From IMG/VR virus record IMGVR_UViG_3300023184_000026, positions 1 through 64,000 of that record: a stretch of 64,000 nucleotides of DNA, one strand, 5' to 3'. Every line of letters starts with the position of its first letter. Position 1 is the first letter of the stretch. The position numbers and the translations under genes are program-made. Below the pieces are notes generated by a model. That model had not been told where the DNA came from. It saw nothing but the letters and a program-made list of their open reading frames with translations, and did not search any database. Below, piece after piece: positions 7,701-61,025 of the stretch.

Positions 7701-9265
7701 GTACATCTGGCAGTGCCGGTAGTGCCGGTAGTGCCGGTAGTGCTGGTACATCTGGCAGTGCCGGTAGTGCCGGTAGTGCCGGTAGTGCTGGTAGAACTGG
7801 ATCAAGTGGCACAAGCGGAGTCAACGGAGCCAACGGAACCAGTGGAACCAGTGGATCAAGTGGCACAAGTGGTGCCGCTGGCGCAGCTGGTACAAGTGGT
7901 ACATCAGGCAGCAGTGGCACAAGTGGTGCCGCTGGCGCAGCTGGTACAAGTGGCACATCAGGTTCAAGTGGCACAAGCGGTGCCGCTGGCGCAGCTGGTA
8001 CAAGTGGCACATCAGGCAGCAGTGGTATAAGTGGCGCAGTGGGCAATCCGGGTGCAAATGGTACATCTGGCAGTGCTGGCACAAGCGGTGCCGCTGGCGC
8101 AGCTGGTACAAGTGGCAGTGCTGGCACAAGCGGTGCCGGAACCATATCTGGCGGCACAGCAAATTATGTTGCAAAATTTACCAATGCAACAACAATATCA
8201 AATAGTCAATTATATGACAACGCAACAAATGTTGGTATTAATACAACTACACCAAATGCTAAATTGGATGTATATGGAAATTTTATTGCGACAGGAAGTG
8301 TATCTGCATTTACAACCGGCGATGCCATTAAAGTGCGAGCATCTACCGGAACAACTCAAGTATACGGTACATATCAAAATACAAGTGGTAGACTTGCCGT
8401 TGGAGTTGAAAGTAGTGTAGGCGGCACTATGATAGTAGGGGCACCGGCATATGCTGGGTTTATAGGAGCCAGCGGCGGCACGAACATACTGGCCTTTGGT
8501 ACAGGTGATAATACCAGAATGATTATAGACGGTTCTGGCAATATTGGTATTGGAACAACTACACCAAATGCTAAATTGGATATAACTGGAAATACAATTA
8601 TATCAGGTTCTTCAAACGATACATTGACACTTTATAGAAGCACTGTAGCCGCAACCAGAATCGCGTGCATCAACAGTTTTGGAACGGGTTGGGCTGGTGT
8701 TAGTGGCGCTGGAATGGTGCTTGGTGGACAAGCTGGTATGGCTACCACCATATACGGCGGAGGAGTGGTCGCCGCGTACATAGATACTAGCGGAAATGTA
8801 GCTATTGGAAAAAGTACACCAATCAATGCTAAATTGGATGTAAGTGGCGATACAATAATAACAGGTTCTGCAACTATCACAACATCACTTGGTGTTGGTA
8901 CTGCTGCATCTGCTACAACAGGAGAAATTCGCGCTACAAATAATGTCACTGCTTACTATTCTGATGATCGTCTTAAAAATAATCTTGGTAATATTCCAGA
9001 TTCACTAAATAAAGTATTATCTCTTAATGGATTTTATTTTGAAGCCAATGAAACTGCACAAAATCTTGGTTATACAAAACAAAAAGAAGTGGGTGTATCT
9101 GCTCAACAAGTACAAGCAATATTGCCAGAAATTATTGCACCAGCACCAATTGATTCCAAGTATATGACAGTAAGATATGAAAAACTTATTCCACTACTTA
9201 TTGAAGCAATCAAAGAACAAAATTCTATGATAGTAGATTTGCAGAAAAAAATAAATAGATTATAA
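4718..9265 (+). CDS. Long tail fibre: Mtd/hyaluronidase-like N-terminal domain, ~360 Gly-X-Y triplets, C-terminal S74-type intramolecular chaperone
   Basis: N-terminus IQLRRGT..QW..ANPVL..GEIG.E.DT.KFKIGNG..AWNSL.Y. Gly-X-Y from about 4880 to 8140. C-terminus YYSDDRLK...YEKLIPLLIEAIKEQ. Confidence 0.85.
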   Translation: MATQIQLRRGTESQWTNANPVLMQGEIGIELDTNKFKIGNGVTAWNSLSYGSTYGGTSGTNGSSGSSGTSGANGSSGSSGSSGTSGSSGTSGTSGSSGTAGSSGSSGTSGAAGTSGSSGTSGVTGAGGSSGSSGTSGSAGSSGSSGSAGTSGSSGTSGTSGTAGSSGAGGSSGSSGTSGSAGSSGSSGTAGTSGSSGTSGTSGSSGTSGTSGSSGSSGTSGATGAGGTAGTSGSSGSSGTAGTSGSSGTSGTAGTSGSSGTAGSSGSSGTSGAAGAGGSSGSSGTSGSSGSSGTAGTSGSSGTAGTSGSSGTAGTSGSSGTSGAAGTSGTAGSSGSSGTSGTSGVTGAGGSSGTSGSSGTSGTSGTSGSSGTSGAAGAAGTSGSSGTSGTSGTSGSSGTSGAAGAAGTSGSSGAAGAAGTSGTSGSSGTSGTSGSSGTSGAAGTAGTGGSSGTSGTSGSSGTSGAAGTAGTSGTSGSSGTSGTSGSSGTSGAAGAAGTSGTSGSSGTSGTSGSSGTSGAAGAAGTSGTSGSSGTSGTSGSSGTSGAAGAAGTSGTSGSSGTSGTSGSSGTSGAAGAAGTSGTSGSSGTSGTSGSSGTSGAAGAAGTSGTSGSSGTSGTSGSSGTSGAAGTAGTGGSSGTSGTSGSSGTSGAAGTSGTSGSSGTSGTSGSSGTSGAAGTAGTGGSSGTSGTSGSSGTSGAAGTAGTSGTSGSSGTSGAAGTAGTSGSSGTSGAAGAAGTAGTSGSSGTSGAAGSPGGNGTSGSSGTSGAAGAAGTSGTSGSSGTSGAAGAAGTSGTSGSSGTSGAAGAAGTSGTSGSSGTSGAAGAAGTSGSAGSAGSAGTSGSAGSAGSAGRTGSSGTSGVNGANGTSGSSGTSGAAGAAGTSGTSGSSGTSGTSGSSGTSGAAGTAGTSGSSGTSGAAGAAGTAGTSGSSGTSGAAGSPGGNGTSGSSGTSGAAGAAGTSGTSGSSGTSGAAGAAGTSGTSGSSGTSGAAGAAGTSGSAGSAGSAGSAGTSGSAGSAGSAGSAGRTGSSGTSGVNGANGTSGTSGSSGTSGAAGAAGTSGTSGSSGTSGAAGAAGTSGTSGSSGTSGAAGAAGTSGTSGSSGISGAVGNPGANGTSGSAGTSGAAGAAGTSGSAGTSGAGTISGGTANYVAKFTNATTISNSQLYDNATNVGINTTTPNAKLDVYGNFIATGSVSAFTTGDAIKVRASTGTTQVYGTYQNTSGRLAVGVESSVGGTMIVGAPAYAGFIGASGGTNILAFGTGDNTRMIIDGSGNIGIGTTTPNAKLDITGNTIISGSSNDTLTLYRSTVAATRIACINSFGTGWAGVSGAGMVLGGQAGMATTIYGGGVVAAYIDTSGNVAIGKSTPINAKLDVSGDTIITGSATITTSLGVGTAASATTGEIRATNNVTAYYSDDRLKNNLGNIPDSLNKVLSLNGFYFEANETAQNLGYTKQKEVGVSAQQVQAILPEIIAPAPIDSKYMTVRYEKLIPLLIEAIKEQNSMIVDLQKKINRL
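4880..8140 (+). repeat. Low-complexity 9-nt-based tandem repeat encoding Gly-X-Y, with a higher-order ~520-560-nt internal duplication
   Basis: Units such as ggcacaagt, ggttcaagt, ggtgcagct. Marker GGCAGTCCGGGTGGAAAT occurs at 6971 and 7529; AGAACTGGA at 7271 and 7793. Confidence 0.95.
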
Positions 9266-12006: not shown

Positions 12007-12390
12007 ATGCCAAGCCCATATTATGATAGAGAAGCAGGTACACCAATTGGTGAAGTTCGCAATGAAGTTTTCAATAAATATGGAAATGCTGCATATGAAT
12101 CTTCTCAATATGGTTGGCATCATGAACATATCAGCAACACAGAAACAAAGATGTATAATCTTGTTCAAGCAGATACTGTGAAATTTTTGGTTGCTACAAT
12201 AAAATATAGGATGGTGGATATGCGACCAATAAATCCAATCACAAAAGCATTGATGTTTCCAGACACACCAGAAATATTGATTCCCGATATACAAAATCCA
12301 ATATCAATTGATCTACAATGGACAGATGCTAATATACCATTTATTGGAAAAGATGAATGTGACAAACAAGGTATAACTTATACTTTGTAA
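12007..12390 (+). CDS. Hypothetical protein (fibre locus)
   Basis: 127-aa ORF with ATG directly after the RCC1 gene. Confidence 0.55.
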   Translation: MPSPYYDREAGTPIGEVRNEVFNKYGNAAYESSQYGWHHEHISNTETKMYNLVQADTVKFLVATIKYRMVDMRPINPITKALMFPDTPEILIPDIQNPISIDLQWTDANIPFIGKDECDKQGITYTL

Positions 12391-13412
12391 TTGCTCAAAT
12401 CTTTTTTTAGCTGCTCAAAAGGAGCGTTCCAATTGTTATATTCTGTTTGGCGATATAATGTCACACTATCATACCAAGGGCTTTTGTTTCCTGGTAATAC
12501 CCACATATAATATGGTAATATTGGTACAATTATCCATGTTGGTTTGCCCATAGCAGCAGATAAATGAGCCACAGATGTACAAGATGTTATTATCAAGTCT
12601 AGTCCAGATATAATTTCAGCAGTGTCACGCCATGTTTTCATTTCATATCTCAAATCTATAAATTGTCCAGTATCCAACAAATCATCATCTCTTTGCAAAC
12701 TATAAAATGAAAATTGTTTTAGTTCAGTCAATTCAAGCATATGTTTTGTTGGAAATCGACGATGTTGTTCATGCTCAAATTTTGGACTGCCTGCCCATCG
12801 CAATCCCACTTTGATTTTGTTGTGTTTATTTGGTAAATATTTTGGTGAAAAATAATTCAAATATGGTTTGCCGCTCAAATCATTATATTCATATTTTAGA
12901 GCATATGGAGCTGACATAGCTTGTACCCAATAATCATAATGACTATGAACACAAACATTCTTGTCTAATATTGCAGATACATATGGTATGTTCTTAAATA
13001 TTGGATACAATTCTTTGTTGCAGCCCAATAATACTTTTGCACCACGTTCATGAAAATCTTTGACAAATCTCACATTGATGATTTCATCACCCAAACCTCC
13101 TTCACCATGAAACAACAAAGTTTTGTCTTTTAATGACTGACCATTGTATAATGTGCCATATGGATTTTTTGCACCACCAAATCCATCAAAAATTCTACCA
13201 GAGTTTAATCCTTCATAGCCTTTGAATAAATTACCACGTCGCATGTTGTGCCAACCCAAATTAAATCTTACTCTGGGATCATTGTCGCCAAGACTATATA
13301 GTATTTTTTCAGAACCATCTAGGTCTCCTTTGATGGACAATGCAAATGCTGCATCAAGTCCTTCATTTTGTCTTTTGAATTCTGCTTCGTCCATTTTTCT
13401 ATCATTAGACAT
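12378..13412 (-). CDS. TPR + GT-B glycosyltransferase (GT9/heptosyltransferase-like)
   Basis: Motifs EGGLGDEI..VRF, VGLRWAG, DTAEIISGLDLIITSCTSVAHLSAAMGKPTW. The ATG at 13412 is preferred over the upstream alternative start. Confidence 0.8.
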   Translation of the reverse strand: MSNDRKMDEAEFKRQNEGLDAAFALSIKGDLDGSEKILYSLGDNDPRVRFNLGWHNMRRGNLFKGYEGLNSGRIFDGFGGAKNPYGTLYNGQSLKDKTLLFHGEGGLGDEIINVRFVKDFHERGAKVLLGCNKELYPIFKNIPYVSAILDKNVCVHSHYDYWVQAMSAPYALKYEYNDLSGKPYLNYFSPKYLPNKHNKIKVGLRWAGSPKFEHEQHRRFPTKHMLELTELKQFSFYSLQRDDDLLDTGQFIDLRYEMKTWRDTAEIISGLDLIITSCTSVAHLSAAMGKPTWIIVPILPYYMWVLPGNKSPWYDSVTLYRQTEYNNWNAPFEQLKKDLSNYKV

Positions 13413-13459
13413 ATTTATGCTTGACAAGTCAATCACAATGTGATGAATTTAAAGAAATT

Positions 13460-47500: not shown

Positions 47501-48475
47501 ATGACTATTTTCGACGAACAAATTGCACGCAAACCGAATCGCTATCCTTGGGCACAAGAATATATAGACGCAATGTGGGCAGGACATTGGACTCCAAATG
47601 AGTTCACATTTACATCTGACTTGCAACAATACAAGACTGAGATGACTCTACAAGAACAACTCATTATCAAGAACACATTGAGTGCTATTGGTCAAATTGA
47701 AATTTCTGTAAAGAAGTTTTGGACAAAGTTGGGTGACACACTTCCACATCCAGCATTATCTGATTTGGGTATTACTATGGGAAACATTGAAGTTATTCAC
47801 AACAATGCATATGAAAAACTATTGGATGTGCTACAATTGCAAGATATATTTGAAGAAAATCTAAAGTTGGATATTATTCAAGGACGAATCAAGTATTTAC
47901 GCAAGTATCTTGATAAGAACTATGAAAATGATAAAAAACAATTTGTATACTCTCTTATTCTATTCACATTGTATGTAGAGAACGTGTCATTATTTAGTCA
48001 GTTTTATATCATCAATTGGTTTAATCGCTACAAGGGTCTACTCAAAGACACTGCACAACAAGTTGCATATACAGCCAAAGAAGAAACATTGCATGGTCTT
48101 GCTGGCGTTAAGATCGTAAATACAATTCGACAAGAAATGCCGGAATTATTTGACGCCGAATTGGAAGAACGCATTCTGCACGAAGCCAAAGAATCCTACG
48201 ACGCCGAATCTAAAATCATTGATTGGATGATTGGTGACTACAAAGATTCAAGAATCAGTGCAGATATTCTCAAAGGATATGTACAAAAGAGATTAAATGA
48301 TTCACTAGAAATGATTGGATTCAAAAAGATTTTTAATGTGTCTCAAGAAATTATTGATTTGACTATGTGGATGGATGAAGATGTAATGGGCAATACTATG
48401 ACTGATTTTTTTCACAAGCGTCCTGTAGAGTACTCCAAGAAAACACAGTCTATCACATTCGACGATCTATTTTAA
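47501..48475 (+). CDS. nrdB: Ribonucleotide reductase class I beta subunit
   Basis: W..HWTPNEF; iron ligands in QIE, E..H, ENVSLFSQF, EE.LH; FF.KRPVEY. Confidence 0.9.
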   Translation: MTIFDEQIARKPNRYPWAQEYIDAMWAGHWTPNEFTFTSDLQQYKTEMTLQEQLIIKNTLSAIGQIEISVKKFWTKLGDTLPHPALSDLGITMGNIEVIHNNAYEKLLDVLQLQDIFEENLKLDIIQGRIKYLRKYLDKNYENDKKQFVYSLILFTLYVENVSLFSQFYIINWFNRYKGLLKDTAQQVAYTAKEETLHGLAGVKIVNTIRQEMPELFDAELEERILHEAKESYDAESKIIDWMIGDYKDSRISADILKGYVQKRLNDSLEMIGFKKIFNVSQEIIDLTMWMDEDVMGNTMTDFFHKRPVEYSKKTQSITFDDLF

Positions 48476-48480
48476 TATAT

Positions 48481-50130
48481 ATGAGCAAAGACATTTATTG
48501 GCTAAACAAAGACAGCGTAACATTTCTTGAAAGAGGATATCTACCCAAGGGTCAAACACCCGAAGAACGAATTATTGAAATATCAAAGGCTGCTGAAAAA
48601 ATTCTAAAGAAAAAAGGATTTGCTGAAAAGTTTGAGTCTTATATGCACAAGGGATGGTATAGTTTATCATCGCCAGTGTGGGCAAATTTTGGCAATGGGC
48701 GAGGATTGTCTATTTCATGCAATGGGTCGTATGTGTCTGACACAATGAATTCTATTCTAGAAAAGACTGCTGAAGTAGGTATGCTCACAAAGTATGGTGC
48801 TGGAACGTCTGGATATTTTGGAGAACTGCGAGCCAGAGGCACACCAATCAGCGTTGGTGGGTCCAGTTCTGGTCCTGTTCATTTTATGGAAATGTTTGAC
48901 AGCGTGACCAGAGTTGTTTCACAATCAAATGTTCGTAGAGGTTCATTTGCTGCATATTTGCCAATTGACCACCCAGATATTATGGAATTTCTCGGTATCC
49001 GTGAAGAAGGTCATGCTATTCAAGATTTGAGTATTGGTGTTTGTGTCAATAACAAGTTCATGAAGAAGATGATTGATGGAGACAAAGACGCTCGATCAAT
49101 TTGGGCAAAAGTGCTCAAAAAGCGTTTTGAAAGTGGTTATCCATATATCTTTTTCAGCGACAATGTAAACAATAACGCTCCTCAAGTATACAAAGATAAA
49201 AAGATGAAGATTTATGCTTCTAATCTTTGTAGCGAAATTTGTTTGAGTTCGTCGGCAGATGAAACATTTGTTTGCAATTTATCATCTATGAACTTGCTTC
49301 ATTATGATGATTGGAAAACAACAGACGCCGTTGAAACATTGACATACTTTCTTGATGCTGTGATGGAAGATTATATTCATGCAACTGAAAATATTCCGTT
49401 TCTCAAGGCTGCTCATAACTTTGCCAAAAATCAAAGAGCACTTGGTATTGGAGTTCTTGGTTGGCATTCATATCTGCAAAGCAAAATGATTGCGTTTGAA
49501 AGTTTAGAAGCCAAACTACTCAATACTCAAATCCATCGTGTTATTCGCGACAAGAGTATTGCTGCAAGTAAAGAAATGGCAGAAGAATATGGTGAACCAG
49601 CATTGTTGAAGGGGTATGGGTTGAGAAACGTCACCACAATGGCAATCGCACCAACCACAAGCAGTTCATTTATTTTGGGTCAAGTATCTCCTTCTGTTGA
49701 ACCGCTCAACAGCAATTATTATACAAAAGATTTGGCTAAAGGTAAGTTCACTTATCGCAATCCATATCTTGAAAATGTACTAGAAAAACATAGCAAGAAC
49801 ACTCAAGAAGTGTGGAAGAGTATTCTGCACAAGGGTGGTTCTGTGCAGCACCTTGAATTTTTGAGCGATCATGAAAAAGAAGTGTTCAAGACATTTGGTG
49901 AAATCAGTCAAAAGGAAATTGTAATACAGGCTGCTGCTCGTCAAAAGTTTATTGATCAGGGGCAAAGTATAAACTTACAGATTCATCCCAAGACTTCGGT
50001 CAAAGAAGTCAACCAATTGATTATATTCGCTTGGGAACAGGGCATAAAGTGCCTATATTATCAACGCGGCACAAACCCAGCCCAAGAACTTGGACGAAGT
50101 ATCCTTGATTGTAAGAGTTGTGAGGCTTAA
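48481..50130 (+). CDS. nrdA: Ribonucleotide reductase class I alpha subunit (short, no ATP cone)
   Basis: SSPVWAN, ISCN, SNLCSEI, VCNLSS, AIAPT.SSS, DQGQSINL, LYY, C-terminal CKSCE. Confidence 0.95.
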   Translation: MSKDIYWLNKDSVTFLERGYLPKGQTPEERIIEISKAAEKILKKKGFAEKFESYMHKGWYSLSSPVWANFGNGRGLSISCNGSYVSDTMNSILEKTAEVGMLTKYGAGTSGYFGELRARGTPISVGGSSSGPVHFMEMFDSVTRVVSQSNVRRGSFAAYLPIDHPDIMEFLGIREEGHAIQDLSIGVCVNNKFMKKMIDGDKDARSIWAKVLKKRFESGYPYIFFSDNVNNNAPQVYKDKKMKIYASNLCSEICLSSSADETFVCNLSSMNLLHYDDWKTTDAVETLTYFLDAVMEDYIHATENIPFLKAAHNFAKNQRALGIGVLGWHSYLQSKMIAFESLEAKLLNTQIHRVIRDKSIAASKEMAEEYGEPALLKGYGLRNVTTMAIAPTTSSSFILGQVSPSVEPLNSNYYTKDLAKGKFTYRNPYLENVLEKHSKNTQEVWKSILHKGGSVQHLEFLSDHEKEVFKTFGEISQKEIVIQAAARQKFIDQGQSINLQIHPKTSVKEVNQLIIFAWEQGIKCLYYQRGTNPAQELGRSILDCKSCEA

Positions 50131-50930: not shown

Positions 50931-52307
50931 ATGTACGATAAGATTGAACAAGAACTCACCGAACTTGATGAAAATCTTCATAAATGGTTCAAAGAGAAAT
51001 GGGTAAGATTTGGACCTGATGGCAAGATCCGAGGCGATTGTGCCAGAGAAAAGTCAAGCGAAGGCAAGCCAAAATGCCGTCCATTAAAATCTGCACAAGG
51101 TATGGGTAAAAAAGCCAGAGCAACTGCTGCACGCAGAAAACGCCGTGAAGATCCAAACCCAGACCGTAAAGGTAAAGCAAAGAATGTAAAAACCGAAGAA
51201 ATCACCCCGAAAAATTTTGACAATTTAAATTATATTGGCAACTGCAAGGACGATGATGTGATTGAGCATATTTTTGGTGATGCCACTAATTTTGCCCAAG
51301 CAGTGGAAAAATATGGAAATGAATTTACAGTCAAGGATTTGGTGGTAAAGTATGATCCAGAAGCAGATATTCATAGTTTCTATTACAAGAATAATGAAAT
51401 GAACGAGCACAAATGCCCAATCTGCGGAGGTGAACTTGTATCAGAAGCACTAATGAACGAAAAGAAAGATGCTTGTTATTATAAGGTCAAATCACGCTAC
51501 AAAGTGTGGCCAAGTGCATATGCATCTGGTGCGCTCGTAAAGTGTCGTAAGAAAGGTGCCAAAAACTGGGGTAATAAATCAGAAGGATTTGAAAAAGTTG
51601 ATGAAGCATGTTGGAAAGGCTATCACAAAGATGGTATGAAAACTATGTTTGGTAAAAAATATCCAAACTGCGTTAAAAACGAAGCCGAACAACAACAAGA
51701 AGAACTAGAGGAAAAATGGAGCGAAAAATACAAGAGTAGTATAGATTGCAGTCATCCAAAAGGATTTAGTCAAAAAGCACATTGCCAAGGTCGCAAAAAA
51801 ACTAATGAATCTATTATGAAAAAAGAACAACTAAAAAACCTGATAAGAGAAATGATAGAAGAAATGTATAATGAACAATCCAAGATGCAAGATGAATGCT
51901 TGGAATGTTATGAATCTGCAATGCAAGAAGGAACAAACGAAATTTGGGAAGATTGTTATCGCAAAACTAATTTAGATATGATTCCAGAAGGTGATGAACA
52001 TACATGCGAAGGTGATGAATTTTATGAAATATATGGAGATATGAAATACGACCCGGAAAAAATAGAAGAAGCAGAATATCATGGTCGTAAAGTTAAACTT
52101 GGTGTTCCTATGAAGGGTGATGTAAAAAAATCAAAAGTTTATGTCAAGAACCCAAAAGGTAATGTTGTAAAAGTTAATTTTGGTGATCCAAACATGCGTA
52201 TAAAAAAGAGCAATCCAAAGCGTAGAAAGAGTTTTAGAGCAAGACATAATTGTTCTACGGCAAAAGATAGAACATCGGCAAGATATTGGAGTTGCAGAGC
52301 ATGGTAA
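50931..52307 (+). CDS. Mosaic protein of small basic Cys-containing modules; C-terminal DUF6321-like module
   Basis: Modules CYYKVKSRYKVWPSAYAS, CWKGY...NCVK, KWSEKYK.SIDC..PKGFSQKAHC, VNFGDPNM.IK.SNP.RRKSFRARHNC. Confidence 0.65.
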   Translation: MYDKIEQELTELDENLHKWFKEKWVRFGPDGKIRGDCAREKSSEGKPKCRPLKSAQGMGKKARATAARRKRREDPNPDRKGKAKNVKTEEITPKNFDNLNYIGNCKDDDVIEHIFGDATNFAQAVEKYGNEFTVKDLVVKYDPEADIHSFYYKNNEMNEHKCPICGGELVSEALMNEKKDACYYKVKSRYKVWPSAYASGALVKCRKKGAKNWGNKSEGFEKVDEACWKGYHKDGMKTMFGKKYPNCVKNEAEQQQEELEEKWSEKYKSSIDCSHPKGFSQKAHCQGRKKTNESIMKKEQLKNLIREMIEEMYNEQSKMQDECLECYESAMQEGTNEIWEDCYRKTNLDMIPEGDEHTCEGDEFYEIYGDMKYDPEKIEEAEYHGRKVKLGVPMKGDVKKSKVYVKNPKGNVVKVNFGDPNMRIKKSNPKRRKSFRARHNCSTAKDRTSARYWSCRAW

Positions 52308-52340
52308 AAATTTAAATAACATTTGTTTATACCCAAAAAT

Positions 52341-52367
52341 CCCCACCATATAAAAGTGGGGTTTTTT
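52341..52367 (+). terminator. Intrinsic terminator
   Basis: CCCCAC...GTGGGG followed by TTTTTT. Confidence 0.7.
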
Positions 52368-52379
52368 ATGATATGGTAC

Positions 52380-52407
52380 TTGACTTTCTATAAAATGTGT
52401 GCATAGT
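52380..52407 (+). promoter_or_regulatory. Possible sigma70-type promoter of the AAA locus
   Basis: TTGACT-N16-CATAGT; same pattern as 56317. Confidence 0.4.
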
Positions 52408-52414
52408 TATGCAC

Positions 52415-52714
52415 ATGAGTAAAACAAAGAAATATTCAATCAACGAAGTCAAAGACATCATTGATACTTGCTATTCACTCAAGCCCGAAAAGCTATTTAT
52501 GGGCGAATTGAAATGGAAGTATCTTGTACGCAGTGCTTTGCGTGGCAAAAATATTCTGTTGCTTGGACCGGCTGGTCAAGGCAAAACATTGGCAGTTCAA
52601 TGCTTGGTTGATGCGATGGAGGAAGTTATTGAGGAAGAAGTTACGGAAGAACAACTGAATGTGTTTAAAACCGAACCGTCCGTGGTTATTGTAAAAATAG
52701 AAGAAATCAAATGA
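52415..52714 (+). CDS. MoxR-like AAA+ ATPase N-fragment with a 31-aa acidic appendage
   Basis: KNILLLGPAGQGKT (Walker A), then LAVQCLVDAM, then EEVIEEEVTEEQLNVFKTEPSVVIVKIEEIK and a stop. Confidence 0.85.
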   Translation: MSKTKKYSINEVKDIIDTCYSLKPEKLFMGELKWKYLVRSALRGKNILLLGPAGQGKTLAVQCLVDAMEEVIEEEVTEEQLNVFKTEPSVVIVKIEEIK

Positions 52715-53456
52715 TCTCTAATTTGAAATTGGATCTGTTATTATGTAACAGTTTATATCTGGTCAATTCTGGATACATAGACAACAAAAATTCATCAACC
52801 CTTTTTGTTCCAACCAATATAATCGTCTCTCCGAACACATTCGTAAATTTATACCGGTTGGCATCTTTTCTTGGGGTAGCCAATTTTATTCCTTGATGAG
52901 ATTCACTCAATCTTTTTTTCATTTTCATGTCCCATAAAATTCCGCGTCTAGATGGCATTATGATTTCTCCCAATTTCAATTTACTTTTCAGCGTGTCAGA
53001 TAGTTTTTTTACTCTAATATCTGTGTCTTTTGTTTTTCCCTTATTCCAGACGGTTGGCCTGTTTCTCAACTTTTTTATTATATTTTCTTTATTTGGATTA
53101 TTGTTATATGTGTCTCCACCTTCTCCACCGATAGTTATATTATAAAGAGGACCATCGTTGGAAATTTTTCTACCTATGACACGTATCAACTCAATTTCCA
53201 ATCTTGATGACTCATCCTTTGTTAAATTTTCATATAATACTTTTACTATTGGGGTGTTCTTACTATCAATAAGTTGTTTTATTTTTGCTCTTATGCAGGT
53301 CCGCGTATCACCCCGTCTCGCTTTTATAAAATGACTATTCCATCTATTATAATTACCCTTTCCTATATAAATTGGCGTTGCTGAAAATTCATGTTCTCCA
53401 TATTTTATATTACAGGGGATTGTTATATCTAATATCACATACACATATTTATTCAT
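52707..53456 (-). mobile_element. Free-standing GIY-YIG-type homing endonuclease gene, antisense, splitting the AAA gene
   Basis: YVYVI...IYIGKG...R.NSH...E..LIR.IGR....GPLYNIT.GGEG; NUMOD3-like VWNKGKT and KRLSESH. ATG at 53456. Confidence 0.8.
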
Positions 53457-53517
53457 TTTAGTTCCCAAGTTGATGTAAAAATAAATATAAAACGATTATA
53501 CCAAAACATTAAATTTT

Positions 53518-54285
53518 ATGAAAAAATACAAGATAAAATATAAAAAAAGAAGACCTTTTTGTCCAATAAATTTGGGGAGTTCTCAGGACGCCCGCGCAAT
53601 TTTAATTGGAAACACTCAGTTCTCCAAAGAGACGGGAACATTTTTTCAGGAGTCTCCATTTGTGAAAGCCATTTTAACTCCAAATTCGATCATCATGCTT
53701 GACGAGTTAAGCCGTGCAAATCCAGACGCCGTGAATATATTGATGCCCGTCCTTGATAACCAGAGATACTTGAGATTGGATGAGTGGGGCGGGAAGATCG
53801 TAAAGGTAGCAGAAGGCGTCTGTTTCATTGCCACGGCAAATATTGGCAATGATTATACCGCTACACGAGTCATGGACAAAGCTTTGACCGATCGTTTCAC
53901 GGTTAAGATTGAAGTTGATATTCTTTCTTCTGAAGAAGAACTGAAGTTGATAAAGGTGGTTTGTCCTGATGCCGATATTCATCTCATGGACAAGATTGCA
54001 CAAATTGCTGCTACAACTCGTGAGTTTACAAAGCAAGGAAAGTTGAGTCGTTTTGTTTCTACTCGTTCTGTTGTAGAAATGGCCGAACTTACCGTGGATG
54101 GATTTAGCTTGGTAGAGTTGGCTGAAATGGTCATTTACCCCGACTATCCAGACGATGGTGGTTTGGACAGTGAACGCACAATGGTCAAACAAGTTGTACA
54201 AAAACATGTTGCGGTCAAAGCCGATCCATTGAACAAAGTGTTCAACACAAACAAACAGAATAAAGACGATTTGCCCCCGTTTTGA
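53518..54285 (+). CDS. MoxR-like AAA+ ATPase C-fragment with an 11-aa basic head
   Basis: MKKYKIKYKKR, then RPFCPINLGSSQD.RA.LIGN; Walker B IIMLDELSRA; ATANIG; MDKALTDRF. Confidence 0.85.
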   Translation: MKKYKIKYKKRRPFCPINLGSSQDARAILIGNTQFSKETGTFFQESPFVKAILTPNSIIMLDELSRANPDAVNILMPVLDNQRYLRLDEWGGKIVKVAEGVCFIATANIGNDYTATRVMDKALTDRFTVKIEVDILSSEEELKLIKVVCPDADIHLMDKIAQIAATTREFTKQGKLSRFVSTRSVVEMAELTVDGFSLVELAEMVIYPDYPDDGGLDSERTMVKQVVQKHVAVKADPLNKVFNTNKQNKDDLPPF

Positions 54286-56297
54286 TGAAAACAAAAATTT
54301 TAGCAGATCATTCCAAGTTTTGGCTTGGCGACGATTTCAATACTCAAAAGTTTGATGCCAGTTCCACAATGGCGTTGCTGAAACTTTCGGCATATCGCCG
54401 TGCTATTGGCAACTTTGTATATATTCTTACTGGAAAGAACATTCCTGTTCGTTTCGCCGAGAACTCAACATCCATGACTGATGGTAAAGTTATTTACATT
54501 GGTGGTGAATTGACCAAGGGTGAATTTGATCCAACGGTTGGATTGTCGTTGCACGAAGCCATGCATATTGTCAAAAGCGACTTTGACTTGATCAAGACCA
54601 TGTGGGGAAAAATTCCTCGCAGTTTGACTGCTGCTGCAAAAGGTCATTTTGATCAAAACTATATTAGTGAATTGGCGAAATATATTCTCAATGTAGTTGA
54701 AGATAGATATATTGATGCATGTGCATATGAAAGTGCACCGGGCTATCGTGGATATTATCAAGCATTATATGACCGTTATTTCAATCTGCCCGAAATTGGT
54801 GAAGCATTGAAGTCCGATGCTTATAGAAATGCTACTGTCAAAAACTATAAGTTTCGTTTCACCAATATCACCAATGTTAATACCGACTTGGATGCCTTAC
54901 CAGCTTTGCGTAAGATTGGTGAACTATTGGATTTAAATAATATTCTGAGGACTGAACTTGAGAATCCAAAGAACCGCTTAGAACTTGCGTATGAAATCAC
55001 AGAAGAAATACTCAAGAGTGTTGTAGAAGAAACAGAAAATCCCAAGCAACAAGACAAAAATAAAGACAATCAAGATAAGCAATCTGGCGGTGATGAACCA
55101 TCCGATGATAAATCAGAACAGTCAGATTCCAACGATGATGTTGATGATGTATTGGGAGGTACGCCTTCTTCTGCCAATCCTATTCAAGACGATGCTGATG
55201 AAACACCGGATGAAAATCCGTCTAAAGATTTGTCCAACGCCGAAAAGAAAAAGGTCGATAAACTCATTGAGAAACAAGAACAAATTGTTACACGCGAAGT
55301 CAAGCAATCTGCATTTGATAAAGATACAATCAAAAAACTTCAAATCCTTGAACAAAGCTCCGTTGATATTGTACAGGTGGGAGATGAAACTGTTCCAAAG
55401 GTTGATTGTATTGTGGTAAAAAACATGACTCGTGAACTCATGATGACATCGGAATTTCCTTACACCAGCAAGTTTTCTCGCGAAACTGGAAATCCCGCTT
55501 CTACGCGAGGAGTACAGCAGGGAATTATTATCGGAACCATGCTTGGTAGAAAATTGCAAATTCGCAGTGAAGTAAAAACCACAAAATTTACTCGCCTACA
55601 AAAAGGTAAGATTGATAAACGTTTGTTGGCATCTATTGGATTTCAAGGAGAAAATTTGTTTTACCAAACCACCACAGACAAATATAAGAATGCTCATTTG
55701 CATGTAACTGTGGATGCTTCTTCTTCAATGGAAACAAAGTGGGAAAAAACAATGACAACACTTGTTGCAATTGCGAAGGCTGTTAGTATGATCAGTAATG
55801 TAAATTTGAGTATTTCATTTAGAAGTGGAGTTTCTAAAGATCGTGGTGGATATGAAACTCCTTATATTGTTTTGGCATATGATTCGCGTAAAGACAAGTT
55901 CAATAAGATTGTTCAATTATTTCCATTGTTATTTCCACATGGTTCTACTCCAGAAGGACTTGCATTTCAGGCAATTATCAAGCATATTCCTGCTTCTACA
56001 CATGAAATGGATAGTTATTTTGTAAATCTGTCTGATGGCGAACCTGCATTTGGTGTGAGTTATTATGGAAACGTCGCAGCAGAACACACAAAGAAGCAAA
56101 TAAATAAAATTCGTGAAATTGGCGTATCTGTTTTGAGCTATTTTGTTGAATGTAATAATACAAACAGCAAACTTTCTGAGAAAAATTCCAACTTGTTTCG
56201 TACCATGTATGGCAAAGATGCACAATTCGTTGATGTTCAGAATGTTGTGCAGATTGCTCATACATTGAATAAAATGTTTCTTTCTAAAGAAAGTTGA
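54285..56297 (+). CDS. vWA-domain protein with N-terminal HExxH (MoxR partner)
   Basis: LHEAMH; VEDRYID; MIDAS-like VDASSSM, STPEG, NLSDGEP. TGATG coupling to the AAA C-fragment. Confidence 0.8.
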   Translation: MKTKILADHSKFWLGDDFNTQKFDASSTMALLKLSAYRRAIGNFVYILTGKNIPVRFAENSTSMTDGKVIYIGGELTKGEFDPTVGLSLHEAMHIVKSDFDLIKTMWGKIPRSLTAAAKGHFDQNYISELAKYILNVVEDRYIDACAYESAPGYRGYYQALYDRYFNLPEIGEALKSDAYRNATVKNYKFRFTNITNVNTDLDALPALRKIGELLDLNNILRTELENPKNRLELAYEITEEILKSVVEETENPKQQDKNKDNQDKQSGGDEPSDDKSEQSDSNDDVDDVLGGTPSSANPIQDDADETPDENPSKDLSNAEKKKVDKLIEKQEQIVTREVKQSAFDKDTIKKLQILEQSSVDIVQVGDETVPKVDCIVVKNMTRELMMTSEFPYTSKFSRETGNPASTRGVQQGIIIGTMLGRKLQIRSEVKTTKFTRLQKGKIDKRLLASIGFQGENLFYQTTTDKYKNAHLHVTVDASSSMETKWEKTMTTLVAIAKAVSMISNVNLSISFRSGVSKDRGGYETPYIVLAYDSRKDKFNKIVQLFPLLFPHGSTPEGLAFQAIIKHIPASTHEMDSYFVNLSDGEPAFGVSYYGNVAAEHTKKQINKIREIGVSVLSYFVECNNTNSKLSEKNSNLFRTMYGKDAQFVDVQNVVQIAHTLNKMFLSKES

Positions 56298-56367: not shown

Positions 56368-58587
56368 ATGATTATCACACAAGAAAAATCCTCACCAGTC
56401 ATCAGCAATATTCTTTCTGCGCCGACTCGTTTCAAGATCAAGGCGTCTGCCAAGGCGTTCAAGATTTTGTCTGGTTTTTATAGCGAACCAATTCTCGCCA
56501 TTCCACGTGAACTTGGTGCCAATGCGTGGGACAGTCATGTCAAGGCCAAGAACACCGACAAGATGTTTGAGGTTCATGCACCCAACACACTGGAGCCCTG
56601 GTTCAGTGTTCGTGACTTTGGCACTGGTTTGACCCCAGAAGCTATTGACACTATCTATACTACATATTTTGAGTCCACAAAGACTGCTGATAATGATAGT
56701 GATGGTTGCATGGGACTGGGTAGCAAGACTCCGTTCAATTATACCGACAATTTCAATGTAACTTCTTTCTATAAGGGTAAGAAGCATGTTTACAACTGCT
56801 TTATTGATGAGTCTGGTTCGCCCAGCATTCTGCATGTTGTTACACAAGATTCTAATGAACATAATGGTGTAGAAATCAAGTTTGGTGTTAAGATTGGTGA
56901 TATTAGTATGTGGGTAGACAAGATTGTTCGTGCATATGAACCGTTTCGTTATCGTCCAACCATTGTTGGTGCCAATCTTGAATATAAGCCGCGTGAATAT
57001 ATCTATACTGGAAAGAGTTGGTCTATGCGCAAGAATGATGGCGGCTATTATAACCGTGGATGCAATGCGTTCATGGGCAACTATTGCTATCCTATCAACA
57101 CCAGTGCTTTGCGCAATGCTTTGCGCAATGTTCCCAATAACGATGCTTACAATATTGAACAAGCGTTGAACTATGGCAACTTTGACTTTTTCTTTGATAT
57201 TGGTGAACTGGAAGTTGCGCCCAATAAAGAACAGCTTCAGTATGAAGACAACAATGCTACTACGCTTGCTATTATTTCTGTACTACGAACTGCTGTGGCT
57301 GAACTAAAAGATATGGTTTATAAGAGCATTGAAACTCCCAAGAGTCGTTGGGAAGCTATGCATCTATACGCCAAATATAATGGCTACCAAAGTCAATATA
57401 GCCATATTCGTAATATCATTGGTGATATTCCAATCAAGTATAATGGATTGAATGTAACTCATGGCAGTGAAAATATCAATACTGTTCATAAAGCAACTGG
57501 AGCATTTGACTCAACAACCAATGTTGTTAGTGTATTTACGGTGTATATGCTTGATAGCGTCACTGGTCGTTTCAAGCGCACTTCAAATTATAGTACGTAT
57601 TCTGAAAACCGTGGTGTAGATATTTTTTATACAAATCTTTCCGCAATCAAGAGTGCTCGGCTGCGATATCACTTGCGTACAAAGTATGCTACTGGAGTAT
57701 TTCCGACTTGCTATATCATCACCGATGAATCCAAGAACAATGATACATTCAATAAGCATATGAATTATTTTGGTTGGAACAAAAATATTGTCACCAATAT
57801 TGAGTCTCTGCCCAAACCTCCGCCAACACCGCGTCAAAAAAAGACCGCTGGTACTGACGAAATTTTCTATGCAGATATCAGTGAGTTTATCAAGCCAACA
57901 AAGAAGCACCATAATGGAGCATATGTTTATTTTGGTAAAAAAGCCGCTACATTTGATTCTGCTGGTACATATTATTATGTTGATTTCTTTTATGCCGATC
58001 CTGTTTGGAACAATGGTAAGAATATTGAAGATCATATGTCTGAAGCTGTAAAATTGTTTGTAGACAACAAGCTCAATGGTTCTGAAACCATTATTTATGG
58101 CATCAATGTAAAGAACAAAAACTTGCTCAAGATTGGCAAATGGATCAATATTTTTGATGTTGTAAAGAAAGTTGTGCATGCTGACAAAGCCAAACATGAA
58201 CAAGATTTGTATCGCATGCAAAGTCGTGCTAAGTTTGAAACAGTCAGCGGTATTTATAACAAACTTACTCGCTGCCCGCAAATCGTGAGCAATATTACAA
58301 ACATTGACACTCGCAAAAAGTTCCAAACATTTGTAAAATCTTATAGCGAACTGCTCAAAGATAGTTCCAACAATGTCAAGTTTTTAGAATTGTTTGACAT
58401 CAGAGCAAATAAACATACCGAGTTGGATATTGATCCAACTGAGTTCAAGAAAATGTTGACTGAAAAGTATCTTGGTGTGTTCGATATTGGAGAACACTAC
58501 TCCACAGTTTCTGCACCGATTTATAAAATCATCAACTTTATTGACGAAAATTTTATTGACGAAAATTTTATTGACGAAAATAGCTAA
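56368..58587 (+). CDS. rIIA: rIIA-like protein (GHKL/Hsp90-like N-terminal ATPase fold)
   Basis: FKIKASAKAFKIL..FYS..ILAIPREL..NAWDSH, VRDFGTGL, GLGSKTPF.Y. Confidence 0.8.
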   Translation: MIITQEKSSPVISNILSAPTRFKIKASAKAFKILSGFYSEPILAIPRELGANAWDSHVKAKNTDKMFEVHAPNTLEPWFSVRDFGTGLTPEAIDTIYTTYFESTKTADNDSDGCMGLGSKTPFNYTDNFNVTSFYKGKKHVYNCFIDESGSPSILHVVTQDSNEHNGVEIKFGVKIGDISMWVDKIVRAYEPFRYRPTIVGANLEYKPREYIYTGKSWSMRKNDGGYYNRGCNAFMGNYCYPINTSALRNALRNVPNNDAYNIEQALNYGNFDFFFDIGELEVAPNKEQLQYEDNNATTLAIISVLRTAVAELKDMVYKSIETPKSRWEAMHLYAKYNGYQSQYSHIRNIIGDIPIKYNGLNVTHGSENINTVHKATGAFDSTTNVVSVFTVYMLDSVTGRFKRTSNYSTYSENRGVDIFYTNLSAIKSARLRYHLRTKYATGVFPTCYIITDESKNNDTFNKHMNYFGWNKNIVTNIESLPKPPPTPRQKKTAGTDEIFYADISEFIKPTKKHHNGAYVYFGKKAATFDSAGTYYYVDFFYADPVWNNGKNIEDHMSEAVKLFVDNKLNGSETIIYGINVKNKNLLKIGKWINIFDVVKKVVHADKAKHEQDLYRMQSRAKFETVSGIYNKLTRCPQIVSNITNIDTRKKFQTFVKSYSELLKDSSNNVKFLELFDIRANKHTELDIDPTEFKKMLTEKYLGVFDIGEHYSTVSAPIYKIINFIDENFIDENFIDENS
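58537..58581 (+). repeat. 15-nt perfect tandem repeat x3 encoding FIDEN at the rIIA C-terminus
   Basis: TTTATTGACGAAAAT x3. Confidence 0.95.
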
Positions 58588-59929: not shown

Positions 59930-60301
59930 ATGTCAAATAAAACAAATAAGACAAGTAAGAAAAACTCGTTCATCATTGAATGGCCCACAAGCCACTTTAC
60001 AATCGAGGACATTCAAGGTAAGTATCCAGATGCAGTCAATATCACCCTTCGCTTTCGTGTAAAGCAGGCTGTTGAAAACAAAGATGTTATGGTCATTGGC
60101 AAAATCAAACCCGCCATTGGTCGCCCAAAGCTTGTATTCTCTCGTGCAAATCCCAGCAAGGAATTGCTTGAATCCGCAAAAGCTGCTGGTGTTATTGCCG
60201 CCAGCGATACGCTGACAACGGTTTCGGTTGCTGAAGTGACGACCGACAATAAGAACAAATCTGTGGTTCAACCCGCGAGCGAAACTGCCCACGTGAGTTA
60301 A
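59930..60301 (+). CDS. Hypothetical protein, possible winged-helix DNA-binding protein
   Basis: IEWP.SHFTI.D...ITLRFRV...IG......GRPKLVF. Confidence 0.55.
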   Translation: MSNKTNKTSKKNSFIIEWPTSHFTIEDIQGKYPDAVNITLRFRVKQAVENKDVMVIGKIKPAIGRPKLVFSRANPSKELLESAKAAGVIAASDTLTTVSVAEVTTDNKNKSVVQPASETAHVS

Positions 60302-60322
60302 TAGATCAACGACGATCGTGTG

Positions 60323-60357
60323 AAAAATCCGCCGAGTTAAAAGCTCGGCGGATTTTC
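60323..60357. terminator. Bidirectional intrinsic terminator
   Basis: AAAAATCCGCCGAG-ttaaaag-CTCGGCGGATTTT. Confidence 0.85.
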
Positions 60358-60368
60358 TATTTATATAT

Positions 60369-61025
60369 ATGAGCGCAAAAATATTAAGATTCAAACAGCC
60401 TACTTCTATAAATGATACTGTATTTTTCATTTTTGAAGTAATAAAAAATACTACATTTGCAATGTATGACTCTGGTATGGGAGATCCTATAAAGTACGGC
60501 AGTATCGCGATAATTTTGGGAAAATTGAATGAAGAAATAAAAAAAGTAAAAGAGAATAAACGAAAAAAATTTAAAGTGTATTGGATGATAAAAGATGCAT
60601 CCAACGGTTGGAAAGAACATATGCAGCCACCAGCCGGATATTTGCGCGGAGGTATTGTAGATGCAATAAATAATTCCGACGACAACTCGGTCCATGTAAA
60701 ATTATCAGCCCCAAGAGGATTCCCAAAATCGGCTATGGATCAAATTTATTGGTTCTCTCTTGGACCAACCGGAAAAAATCTGCATTTTTTGTATGATTCA
60801 CACATGGGATCTTCTTTATGGGGAGAAAATAGGCAAAAGATATTTGCATTTTTAAGAGAAATGGATGAACAAGTTAGATCCAACAAACGTGAAAAATATA
60901 TATTATGGTGTTTTGATAGAAAAAATGAAAATGAAATTTGGAAAAAAACAGCATTAAAATATCTTCCAAAATTTGATATAGACTCCACAAAAAAAACCAA
61001 GATCGTTGAAGAAAGTAAAAAATAA
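60369..61025 (+). CDS. Hypothetical protein
   Basis: 218-aa ORF with ATG, preceded by TATTTATA. Confidence 0.55.
   Translation: MSAKILRFKQPTSINDTVFFIFEVIKNTTFAMYDSGMGDPIKYGSIAIILGKLNEEIKKVKENKRKKFKVYWMIKDASNGWKEHMQPPAGYLRGGIVDAINNSDDNSVHVKLSAPRGFPKSAMDQIYWFSLGPTGKNLHFLYDSHMGSSLWGENRQKIFAFLREMDEQVRSNKREKYILWCFDRKNENEIWKKTALKYLPKFDIDSTKKTKIVEESKK

What the first reader, a model, noticed from the sequence alone, without database searches (positions are those of the whole stretch)
52415..54285. Intein-less fractured AAA+ ATPase whose halves carry charge-complementary docking peptides
Seen: a MoxR-like ATPase is cut just after Walker A (GPAGQGKTLAVQCLVDAM / RPFCPINLGSSQD) by an antisense GIY-YIG endonuclease gene. 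The N-half gains a 31-aa tail, EEVIEEEVTEEQLNVFKTEPSVVIVKIEEIK (10 Glu, 3 Lys, net -7). The C-half gains an 11-aa head, MKKYKIKYKKR (net +7, alternating beta-strand pattern). There is no His-Asn + nucleophile end and no room for a group I ribozyme core. Known: endonuclease-fractured genes usually rejoin through split inteins; Aeh1 nrdA split by mobE reassembles non-covalently. Inference: head + tail read together like one small beta-beta-alpha-beta domain. Opening its first hairpin would put the two ATPase break points side by side, giving a portable non-covalent 'zipper' that lets a homing endonuclease sit in an essential gene without splicing.
Basis: partly seen in the sequence, partly recalled or inferred. 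Interest (0 to 1): 0.9.

Follow-up and report, generated by a model that had tools for sequence, protein, structure and literature searches.

The report
Endonuclease-split phage ATPase with docking tails
A phage ATPase gene has been cut in two by a selfish endonuclease gene, and each half carries a short, conserved, oppositely charged extension that most likely holds the two proteins together without any splicing; this trick was shown once before, in phage Aeh1 ribonucleotide reductase, and is seen here across a whole gene family.

Summary
An AAA_5/MoxR-CobS-like ATPase is split exactly in the short loop after the Walker A helix (DAM | RRPF). The insert is about 925 nt and carries an antisense GIY-YIG homing endonuclease gene (HEG). 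Close relatives have the uninterrupted gene.

The 31-aa acidic tail and 8-11-aa basic head are not accidental read-through:
- More than 35 split N-halves, down to about 40% identity, end in the same tail at the same stop.
- Split C-halves share a [YF]-x-[VI]-x-Y head.
- Tail dN/dS is 0.26-0.51.
- The module persists with two unrelated GIY-YIG lineages (sense or antisense) and with no HEG at all (95-128 nt spacers).
- Tail and head net charges co-vary with opposite sign in 11 pairs (rho -0.98), including charge-swapped pairs.
- Among the 150 best matches from 1.84 billion representative proteins, no uninterrupted protein aligns into the tail.

I found no intron or intein signature. A mosaic (co-conversion-like) tract, a scattered distribution on the tree and a natural deletion revertant all point to a mobile cassette.

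Non-covalent reassembly through element-derived charged tails was already demonstrated for Aeh1 NrdA/mobE (Crona et al. 2011). This is therefore a new, much richer member of a known kind. Physical docking is inferred, not shown. I found no portability to other genes.

The parts
52341..52361 (.). G+C-rich hairpin followed by a T-run, between the upstream gene and the N-half; likely terminator, so the N-half starts its own transcription unit
   Evidence: terminator-like site; sequence
52409..52618 (+). N-fragment core: N-terminal helices, strand beta1, Walker A (GPAGQGKT) and helix alpha1 up to DAM. Start at ATG 52409 (MHM..., as in relatives) or at 52415.
   Evidence: AF2 helices 9-22, 31-43 and 57-67
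52619..52714 (+). 31-aa acidic C-terminal tail plus stop codon. Extended segment A (residues 69-76), helix (78-86), extended segment B (87-99). Its last 8 nt overlap the 3' end of the HEG, the two genes converging.
   Evidence: conserved in more than 35 split N-halves with the same stop; dN/dS 0.26-0.51; tail-only HMM finds distant tails; AF2
52707..53468 (-). Free-standing GIY-YIG homing endonuclease gene (253 aa from TTG, 249 aa from ATG at 53456), antisense to the ATPase
   Evidence: Pfam LEM-3_GIY-YIG 5e-6 (26.9 bits, cut-off 27); phrog_314 homing endonuclease 3e-13; 48% identical over 139 aa to the antisense HEG at the same site in L141; absent from close relatives L008-L011
53495..53524 (-). 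Sigma-70-like promoter match (TTTTCA, 18 nt, TG-TATAAT) upstream of the HEG; it overlaps the C-half start codon on the other strand
   Evidence: consensus match only
53518..53550 (+). Basic N-terminal head of the C-fragment (MKKYKIKYKKR). M1-Y8 are certainly extra; K9-R11 align with native KRR of the closest unsplit relatives.
   Evidence: head motif [YF]-x-[VI]-x-Y shared by all split C-halves
53551..54285 (+). C-fragment core: strand beta2 (RPFCPINLG), Walker B (LDE), sensor 1 (TAN) and the CbbQ_C-type lid domain
   Evidence: Pfam AAA_5 2.7e-11 and CbbQ_C 1.2e-5; invariant catalytic columns; PDB relatives are midasin AAA, CobS, NorQ and CbbQ; AF2
52595..53830 (+). Approximate imported (co-conversion-like) tract: the cassette plus about 24 nt upstream and about 290 nt downstream. 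Here identity to the unsplit relative L009 drops to 53-76%, against 96-100% and 89-100% outside it.
54282..56297 (+). Downstream 671-aa partner with a C-terminal vWA-like region (DASSS metal-site motif read by eye). Its start overlaps the ATPase stop. Synteny is kept in unsplit relatives.
   Evidence: synteny; no Pfam or PHROG hit, so the vWA assignment is by motif only

Best explanation
This is a homing-endonuclease-fractured AAA+ ATPase (AAA_5 / MoxR-CobS-like, paired with a vWA-type partner) in a T4-related jumbo myovirus. A cassette of about 925 nt sits in the 2-3-residue loop between the Walker A helix (alpha1) and strand beta2.

The two halves are translated separately. The N-fragment ends in a 31-aa tail (extended, helix, extended). 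The C-fragment begins with an 8-11-aa alternating strand-like head. The tail and head form a conserved module under protein-level selection. Most likely they pair with each other: the segment leaving alpha1 runs antiparallel to the head strand entering beta2, stabilised by cross-strand ion pairs and a Y/V/Y hydrophobic face, with the tail helix and last strand packing on top. This would clamp the beta1/P-loop/alpha1 piece to the rest of the fold, so the ATPase reassembles non-covalently. That is the solution demonstrated for Aeh1 NrdA-a/NrdA-b.

The cassette (tail, HEG, head and about 300 nt of flank) spreads among alleles of this gene by endonuclease-driven gene conversion. Once the gene is split, the spacer between the tail stop and the head start acts as a safe harbour in which HEGs are swapped or lost.

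Shown: architecture, break point, conservation, terminal position, independence from the HEG, charge covariation, mosaicism, scattered distribution on the tree, and a deletion revertant.
Inferred: physical tail-head contact, requirement for activity, HEG activity and its target.
For: 1. Clean break with empty-site relatives: adjacent codons in Mel-JY01 and LR756508, and 319-aa uninterrupted genes in L008-L011.
2. Tail conserved. 21 near relatives (59-98% identical) share E-x-[IV]-x-EE-[VM]-TEE-[QR]-LN...IIKTEE and the same stop, with 7 invariant tail residues. 17 more, at 37-46% identity, keep the pattern. A tail-only HMM finds distant tails at E from 5e-6 to 6e-3, and no unsplit protein scores below E=1.
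3. Always terminal. In a profile search of 1.84e9 representatives, every listed hit aligned through the tail ends there. No listed protein of 300 aa or more aligns past profile position about 75.
4. Protein-level selection. Tail dN/dS is 0.26-0.51, against 0.18-0.24 for the N core, with dS up to 1.7.
5. Head conserved in all split C-halves.
6. Independent of the HEG. The same tail and head occur with antisense GIY-YIG genes (window, L046, L051, L141, L142, L049), with sense SegE-like GIY-YIG genes (L004-7, L018, L052, L053, L140), and with none (L045 95 nt, L050 128 nt).
7. Charge covariation. 11 tail/head pairs run from -7/+8 through 0/+1 to +6/-7. Spearman rho is -0.98, and none of 100,000 random re-pairings of heads with tails was as extreme. 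Tail segments A and B carry the signal; the helix does not.
8. No splicing signals. There are no Rfam intron hits in the window or in HEG-less loci and no intein domain or motifs.
9. Mobility. The identity profile is mosaic. The split state needs at least 6 changes on the C-part tree. A fused revertant (P0030) arose by a 908-nt deletion at a 5-nt microhomology and was seen in two independent samples.
10. Precedent. Element-derived, oppositely charged tails are essential in Aeh1 NrdA (PMC3045599).
Against: - There is no direct structural or biochemical evidence. The halves could be folded only separately, and in those models the tail and head strands are unpaired coils.
- In the Aeh1 precedent the tails were not needed for heterodimer formation but for the next assembly step. 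'Docking of the two halves' may therefore be the wrong level.
- The charge correlation is not corrected for phylogeny. The pairs represent perhaps 3-5 independent charge states.
- Some C-half start codons are uncertain (L004, L018).
- Part of the head's positive charge (KRR) is native.
- Activity of the HEG and of the split ATPase is assumed.
Confidence: 0.72

Rival explanations
1. The tail and head are functional but act at a higher assembly level: hexamer formation, contact between neighbouring protomers, or binding of the vWA partner. They would not clamp the two fragments of one protomer. This is what was found for the Aeh1 NrdA tails.
For: In Crona et al. 2011 the tail-less mutants still formed the heterodimer but failed at dimerisation and holoenzyme assembly. 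The split AAA+ core might co-fold through its own beta-sheet. The conservation and charge covariation fit any tail-head contact, whether within a protomer or between protomers.
Against: The two peptides emerge from points that are 2-3 residues apart in the intact fold, so contact within one protomer is the simplest geometry. The fused revertant P0030 keeps only 7 tail residues and no head. The module is therefore dispensable once the chain is continuous, which argues against an added oligomerisation role.
Confidence: 0.15
2. The tail plus head is an ancestral small insertion domain of an uninterrupted ATPase that a HEG later cut at its hairpin turn. The peptides would be inherited host sequence, not element-derived.
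For: The tail end and head start would be adjacent, as in a cut hairpin. The module is older than any single HEG lineage. Origin from the element is not demonstrated.
Against: Among the best 150 hits in 1.84e9 representatives, no uninterrupted protein aligns past profile position about 75. Of the 59 listed full-length proteins, the 39 with a recognisable loop motif have a short alpha1-beta2 loop, mostly AL-x-RP-x-FYFNLG. None of the 120 best C-half hits is longer than 323 aa.
Confidence: 0.12
3. The extensions are incidental: simple read-through to the first stop and read-in from the first ATG of inserted AT-rich DNA, tolerated but without function. The halves would associate on their own, or the gene would be dead.
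For: 31 stop-free codons have about 10% chance at this composition (my estimate). A-rich DNA translates to lysine. The loop tolerates a 7-aa scar.
Against: The tail has the same stop position and invariant residues across more than 35 sequences down to about 40% identity. Its dN/dS is below 1 with saturated dS. Conservation is kept with different HEGs or none. Compensatory charge swaps occur. Both halves keep all catalytic motifs.
Confidence: 0.03
4. The interruption is removed by splicing: a group I/II intron carrying an antisense HEG, or protein trans-splicing by a degenerate split intein.
For: HEGs usually reside in introns or inteins. Fractured genes with split inteins exist (Dassa et al. 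2009, PMC2677866). The same ATPase family has N-fragments that look like short split-intein pieces at a different site, the Walker A loop (P0268, P0288).
Against: No Rfam intron match up to E=10 in the window, or up to E=1 in HEG-less loci. Only about 88 + 79 nt of the insert lie outside the HEG ORF, and HEG-less spacers are 95-128 nt. The in-frame stop and start are conserved, and the tail is conserved as protein. The tail starts with E/K/S/N, not C/S. The head does not end in HN, and the next residue is R/P, not C/S/T. The total of 31+11 aa is far too small for an intein.
Confidence: 0.02

Closest known systems
Phage Aeh1 nrdA-a / mobE / nrdA-b (Friedrich et al. 2007; Crona et al. 2011, PMC3045599)
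   Same: A free-standing homing endonuclease gene splits a conserved enzyme gene between two secondary-structure elements. Both fragments carry unique terminal tails absent from contiguous homologues. The tails have opposite charge. There is no RNA or protein splicing, and function is restored non-covalently. The authors predicted further overlooked cases.
   Different: The HEG is GIY-YIG, not HNH, and here lies antisense. The host protein is an AAA+ ATPase cut after Walker A. Charge polarity is reversed in this window (acidic C-tail, basic N-head). Aeh1 is a single case. Here the tail/head module is conserved over a whole family, survives HEG replacement and HEG loss, and shows charge-swapped variants and a natural fused revertant. 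The biochemistry was done for Aeh1 and not for this case.
Fractured genes with split inteins and an intervening HEG (Dassa et al. 2009, PMC2677866)
   Same: The gene order is N-fragment, free-standing HEG, C-fragment, in environmental phage-like DNA. The fragments carry extensions that associate, in part electrostatically.
   Different: There are no intein blocks, no nucleophiles, and 42 aa in total instead of about 130 or more. No ligation is expected. Possible true split-intein versions of this same ATPase exist at another site (P0268, P0288), which makes the contrast direct.
T4 topoisomerase gp39 / mobA / gp60 and intronless homing by Seg/Mob endonucleases (Belle et al. 2002; Edgell et al. 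2010, PMC2988022)
   Same: A free-standing HEG lies between two pieces of a gene that is contiguous elsewhere. Flanking markers are co-converted. gp39 and gp60 have charged tail-like ends.
   Different: The function of the gp39/gp60 tails is untested. No ribosomal bypass element is present here.
Engineered split-protein complementation with charged or coiled-coil peptides
   Same: Short oppositely charged peptides rescue the assembly of protein fragments (cited).
   Different: This one is natural, apparently beta-strand based, and evolutionarily maintained.

Membership tests
HEG-fragmented gene reassembled by element-associated tails (Aeh1 NrdA/mobE type) | Gene contiguous in relatives, but two separate ORFs here, broken at one point with no residues lost | tested here: met
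HEG-fragmented gene reassembled by element-associated tails (Aeh1 NrdA/mobE type) | Free-standing homing endonuclease gene between the fragments, with presence/absence polymorphism among close relatives | tested here: met
   (GIY-YIG HEG); L008-L011 lack it
HEG-fragmented gene reassembled by element-associated tails (Aeh1 NrdA/mobE type) | Terminal extensions on both fragments that are absent from contiguous homologues | tested here: met
HEG-fragmented gene reassembled by element-associated tails (Aeh1 NrdA/mobE type) | Extensions of opposite net charge | tested here: met
   -7/+8 in the window; anticorrelated across 11 pairs, rho -0.98
HEG-fragmented gene reassembled by element-associated tails (Aeh1 NrdA/mobE type) | Extensions required for assembly or activity of the split enzyme | not testable with these tools
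   Needs co-expression and assays; only evolutionary proxies were obtained here
HEG-fragmented gene reassembled by element-associated tails (Aeh1 NrdA/mobE type) | No RNA or protein splicing | tested here: inconclusive
   In silico there is no intron or intein signal, and HEG-less spacers are 95-128 nt. RT-PCR and intact mass are not available.
Split-intein fractured gene | N-fragment extension begins with Cys/Ser and carries intein blocks A/B; C-fragment extension ends in His-Asn followed by Cys/Ser/Thr | tested here: not met
   The tail starts with E (K/S/N/G/D/Q/V in relatives). The head ends ...KKR followed by RP. No Hint or intein Pfam hit.
Group I/II intron carrying a HEG | Recognisable ribozyme core in the insert | tested here: not met
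   Rfam E-value scans show no intron family. Only about 167 nt of the insert lie outside the HEG ORF.
GIY-YIG homing endonuclease | GIY-YIG catalytic domain | tested here: met
   Pfam PF22945 at 5.4e-6, but 26.9 bits against a cut-off of 27. phrog_314 at 3.4e-13. YVYV...IYIGKG motif and 48% identity to the L141 HEG catalytic half.
GIY-YIG homing endonuclease | Site-specific cleavage of the HEG-less allele and gene conversion | tested here: inconclusive
   A co-conversion-like mosaic tract and a scattered distribution on the tree fit homing. Cleavage itself is not testable here.
AAA+ ATPase, AAA_5 / MoxR-CobS-NorQ-CbbQ group | Walker A, Walker B, sensor 1 and lid domain all present (here spread over two polypeptides) | tested here: met

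The most novel reading that the evidence does not exclude
The tail and head together form a dedicated, self-complementing mini-domain of about 40 residues (beta-alpha-beta plus beta). On this reading it evolved as the 'antidote' part of a mobile cassette. It makes one loop of an AAA+ ATPase a permanent landing pad in which unrelated GIY-YIG endonucleases come and go. It keeps working after the endonuclease is lost. Its electrostatics have been re-tuned, even inverted, by compensatory evolution. That would make it a natural, transferable split-protein zipper and a third route, beside introns and inteins, by which selfish nucleases neutralise insertion into coding sequence, here with family-wide evolutionary proof.
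Probability: 0.5. Interest if true: 0.7.

Novelty: new member of a known kind. Interest (0 to 1): 0.6.

Why it matters
Crona et al. proposed that tail-mediated reassembly might be a general way to neutralise gene fragmentation by mobile elements. They had one case, and they noted that such tails would be hard to recognise.

This locus supplies a second, independent case in a different fold with a different endonuclease family. For the first time it also comes with comparative depth:
- dozens of split alleles;
- two HEG lineages in both orientations;
- HEG-less survivors;
- a fused revertant;
- charge-swapped tail/head pairs.

That turns a single-case observation into something testable by evolution and by simple biochemistry. 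It also offers natural orthogonal peptide pairs (acidic/basic and basic/acidic) for split-protein engineering. Finally, it warns annotators that 100-aa 'ATPase fragments' beside HEGs in phage genomes are functional half-genes, not pseudogenes.

Tried and rejected
- Intron. Rfam E-value scans of window 52200-54400 and of the HEG-less loci L045 and L050 gave only weak, irrelevant hits.
- Intein. No Pfam Hint or intein domain, and the boundary residues are wrong.
- Tail on other genes. The degenerate DNA pattern for EE[VIM]TEE[QRH][LF]N was scanned in IMG/VR (30 stretches) and in metagenome contigs (85 stretches). Only this ATPase carries it as a terminal tail. The rest are internal chance matches, for example in proteins that by eye look like ribonucleotide reductases (not checked).
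- More antisense-clade HEGs. A scan for W[VI]KDPNW in IMG/VR gave 3 stretches, none related.
- Other copies of these HEGs in the window: none.
- Uninterrupted homologue containing the tail: none among the best 150 of 262 profile hits, and none of the 120 best C-half hits exceeds 323 aa.
- Context of the possible split-intein N-fragments P0268 and P0288. The IMG/VR scans found only unsplit relatives or nothing.
- Co-folding the halves was not possible. The separate folds give secondary structure only.
- Literature. No description of this split ATPase was found.
- Misassembly was rejected because the arrangement recurs on independent contigs and samples.
Full report
**What is there.** The window comes from a 297-kb contig (IMGVR_UViG_3300023184_000026 / Ga0214919_10000013). 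It is a T4-related jumbo myovirus, with a tail sheath, a DnaB-like helicase, nrdA/B and rIIA.

At 52409/52415-52714 (+) lies a 99-101-aa ORF with the N-terminal helices, Walker A loop and following helix of an AAA+ ATPase. At 53518-54285 (+) lies a 255-aa ORF with the rest of the fold: AAA_5 at 2.7e-11 and the CbbQ_C lid. Between them, on the minus strand, is a 249/253-aa GIY-YIG ORF. It scores Pfam 5e-6 (just under the cut-off) and PHROG 'homing endonuclease' 3e-13. The closest solved relatives of the ATPase are the midasin AAA domains, CobS, NorQ and CbbQ. A 671-aa partner with a DxSxS-type motif follows, as it does in unsplit relatives.

**The break.** In Microcystis phage Mel-JY01 and in LR756508, N-half residue 68 and C-half residue 11 fall on adjacent codons. 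Four IMG/VR contigs (L008-L011) carry an uninterrupted 319-aa gene. It is 93-96% identical to the N core and reads ...DAL-KRRENYF-YLNMG... at the junction. Of 59 more distant full-length homologues, the 39 with a recognisable loop motif have a short loop, mostly AL-x-RP-x-FYFNLG.

The tail (31 aa, net -7) and head (MKKYKIKYKKR, net +7) are as described. K9-R11 of the head may be native.

**Not splicing.** Rfam found no intron family in the region or in HEG-less relatives. Only about 167 nt of the insert lie outside the HEG ORF. No intein domain or boundary residues are present.

**The extensions are a conserved module.**
- A search restricted to short proteins returned 21 further N-halves of 94-106 aa (59-98% identical). 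All end in the same tail at the same stop, with 7 invariant and 6 near-invariant tail positions. The native first 22 residues have none.
- A profile search of 1.84 billion representatives added about 18 more N-halves at 37-46% identity, some with a 90-aa N-extension. They all terminate at the end of the tail. No listed protein of 300 aa or more aligned beyond profile position about 75.
- A tail-only HMM recovers the distant tails (E from 5e-6 to 6e-3) and nothing else.
- Between three DNA alleles, tail dN/dS is 0.26-0.51 with dS up to 1.7, close to the N core at 0.18-0.24.
- Split C-halves (234-285 aa) all begin with a strand-like head built on [YF]-x-[VI]-x-Y.

**Independent of the resident endonuclease.**
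- In L004-L007 (C-half 88-90% identical) the same tail and head, homologous at DNA level right up to the tail's end and from the head's second codon, flank a different, sense-strand SegE-like GIY-YIG gene. L018-type loci, L052, L053 and L140 have relatives of that sense HEG.
- L046, L049, L051, L141 and L142 have antisense HEGs whose 3' ends overlap the tail stop, as in the window. The HEGs form two clades. The window's catalytic half is 48% identical to that of L141.
- L045 and L050 have no HEG at all, only 95- and 128-nt spacers, yet keep the stop, the start, the tail and the head.

**Charge covariation.** For 11 N/C pairs on the same contig, tail/head net charges are:

| Locus | Tail | Head |
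|---|---|---|
| window | -7 | +8 |
| L004 | -6 | +6 |
| L018 | -6 | +6 |
| L051 | -5 | +6 |
| L053 | -5 | +6 |
| L052 | -4 | +5 |
| L142 | -3 | +1 |
| L046 | 0 | +1 |
| L141 | +1 | -2 |
| L050 | +4 | -6 |
| L045 | +6 | -7 |

Spearman rho is -0.98, and none of 100,000 random re-pairings of heads with tails was as extreme. The test is not corrected for phylogeny. In the swapped pairs the hydrophobic positions of the head are kept (MFEVEY against KYKIKY) while the charged positions flip. The two extended tail segments carry the signal (rho -0.86 and -0.81); the helix does not.

Single-chain AF2 predicts alpha1 (57-67), an extended segment (69-77), a helix (78-86) and an extended end for the N-half (pLDDT 84). 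For the C-half it predicts an extended head running into beta2 at 14-18. The two extended segments leave and re-enter the core at points that are neighbours in the intact fold. An antiparallel ribbon is therefore the natural geometry. That is inference; no co-fold could be run.

**Mobility.**
- Against the unsplit L009, the window's gene is 96-100% identical for nt 1-180. It is 53-76% identical from about 24 nt before the insertion point to about 290 nt after it, and 89-100% thereafter. This is the signature of a cassette imported with flanking sequence by gene conversion.
- On a tree of the C-parts, the split state needs at least 6 changes. Split/unsplit sister pairs such as L141/P0179, L053/P0205 and L052/P0240 are well supported.
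- P0030, found in two independent metagenomes, is a fused 320-aa gene that is 97.6% identical to the window's C-half. A 908-nt deletion at a 5-nt microhomology removed most of the tail, the HEG and the head, leaving DAM-EEVIEEE-RRPF. The loop tolerates a scar, and the module is dispensable once the chain is continuous.

**Comparison with what is known.** The principle is published. [quoted passage not shown] The authors suggested a general mechanism and pointed to gp39/gp60 (PMC3045599). Fractured genes with split inteins share the gene order but not the chemistry (PMC2677866). I found no description of this ATPase case.

It is therefore a new member of a known kind, but with evidence the precedent lacks: family-wide conservation, HEG turnover, HEG-less survivors, a revertant and compensatory charge swaps. 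The tail was not found on any other gene, so 'portable' applies only within this gene family.

**Verdict.** It is unproven physically and overstated in novelty and portability. Interest 0.6.

Noticed in passing
P0268 and P0288 (proteins; no locus recovered): N-fragments of the same ATPase family that stop about 31 aa after the Walker A lysine and continue GSGK-C-L-[YE]-K-D-T-x-[LV]... This looks like the short N-piece of an atypical split intein inserted in the P-loop. If so, the family is fractured in two different ways at two sites 13 residues apart.
   Followed up: partly
L013 and L014 (protein P0030); corresponds to window 52640-53547 deleted: A natural fused revertant of the split gene, seen in two independent metagenomes. 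It arose by a 908-nt deletion at a 5-nt microhomology and leaves a 7-aa scar (EEVIEEE) in the loop.
   Followed up: yes
window 52595-53830 (approx.): Sharp drop of identity to the unsplit relative L009 (53-76% against 96-100% and 89-100% outside). The tract extends about 24 nt upstream but about 290 nt downstream of the insertion. This asymmetric co-conversion-like tract hints that the HEG cuts downstream of its insertion site.
   Followed up: partly
window 56368-58587: rIIA-like protein (phrog_612, 3e-96) whose C-terminus ends in a short tandem peptide repeat (IDENF-IDENF-IDENS).
   Followed up: no
window 12378-13436 (-) and 59933-60685 (-): Besides the HEG, these are the only sizeable non-overlapping minus-strand ORFs in an otherwise plus-strand window. 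Neither has a Pfam or PHROG hit. They could be further inserted or mobile genes.
   Followed up: partly
window 47501-50130: A ribonucleotide reductase small-subunit gene lies directly upstream of a large-subunit-like gene of only 549 aa. Its barrel domain matches in 3 stretches, and it is short for a class I NrdA.
   Followed up: no
window 4718-9265: A 1515-aa plus-strand ORF is overlapped by very long ORFs on the opposite strand (816 and 1093 aa) and in another plus frame (757 aa). This suggests strongly biased or repetitive composition in this gene.
   Followed up: no
window 50931-52307: A 458-aa lysine- and cysteine-rich protein of unknown function (phrog_727, 4e-48) lies immediately upstream. 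It is followed by a hairpin and T-run at 52341-52361.
   Followed up: no
L015-L044 and L055-L134 (non-ATPase matches): The motif EE[IV]TEEQFN recurs internally in a family of phage proteins (context ...GGTYQQAP[FY]EEITEEQFN...). By eye these look like ribonucleotide reductases, but that was not checked. It is a chance resemblance to the tail, not a tail.
   Followed up: partly
L046 4693-4860: In a distant split relative, the spacer between the antisense HEG and the C-half contains an exact T4 late-promoter-like TATAAATA. The C-half may therefore have its own promoter in some lineages.
   Followed up: no
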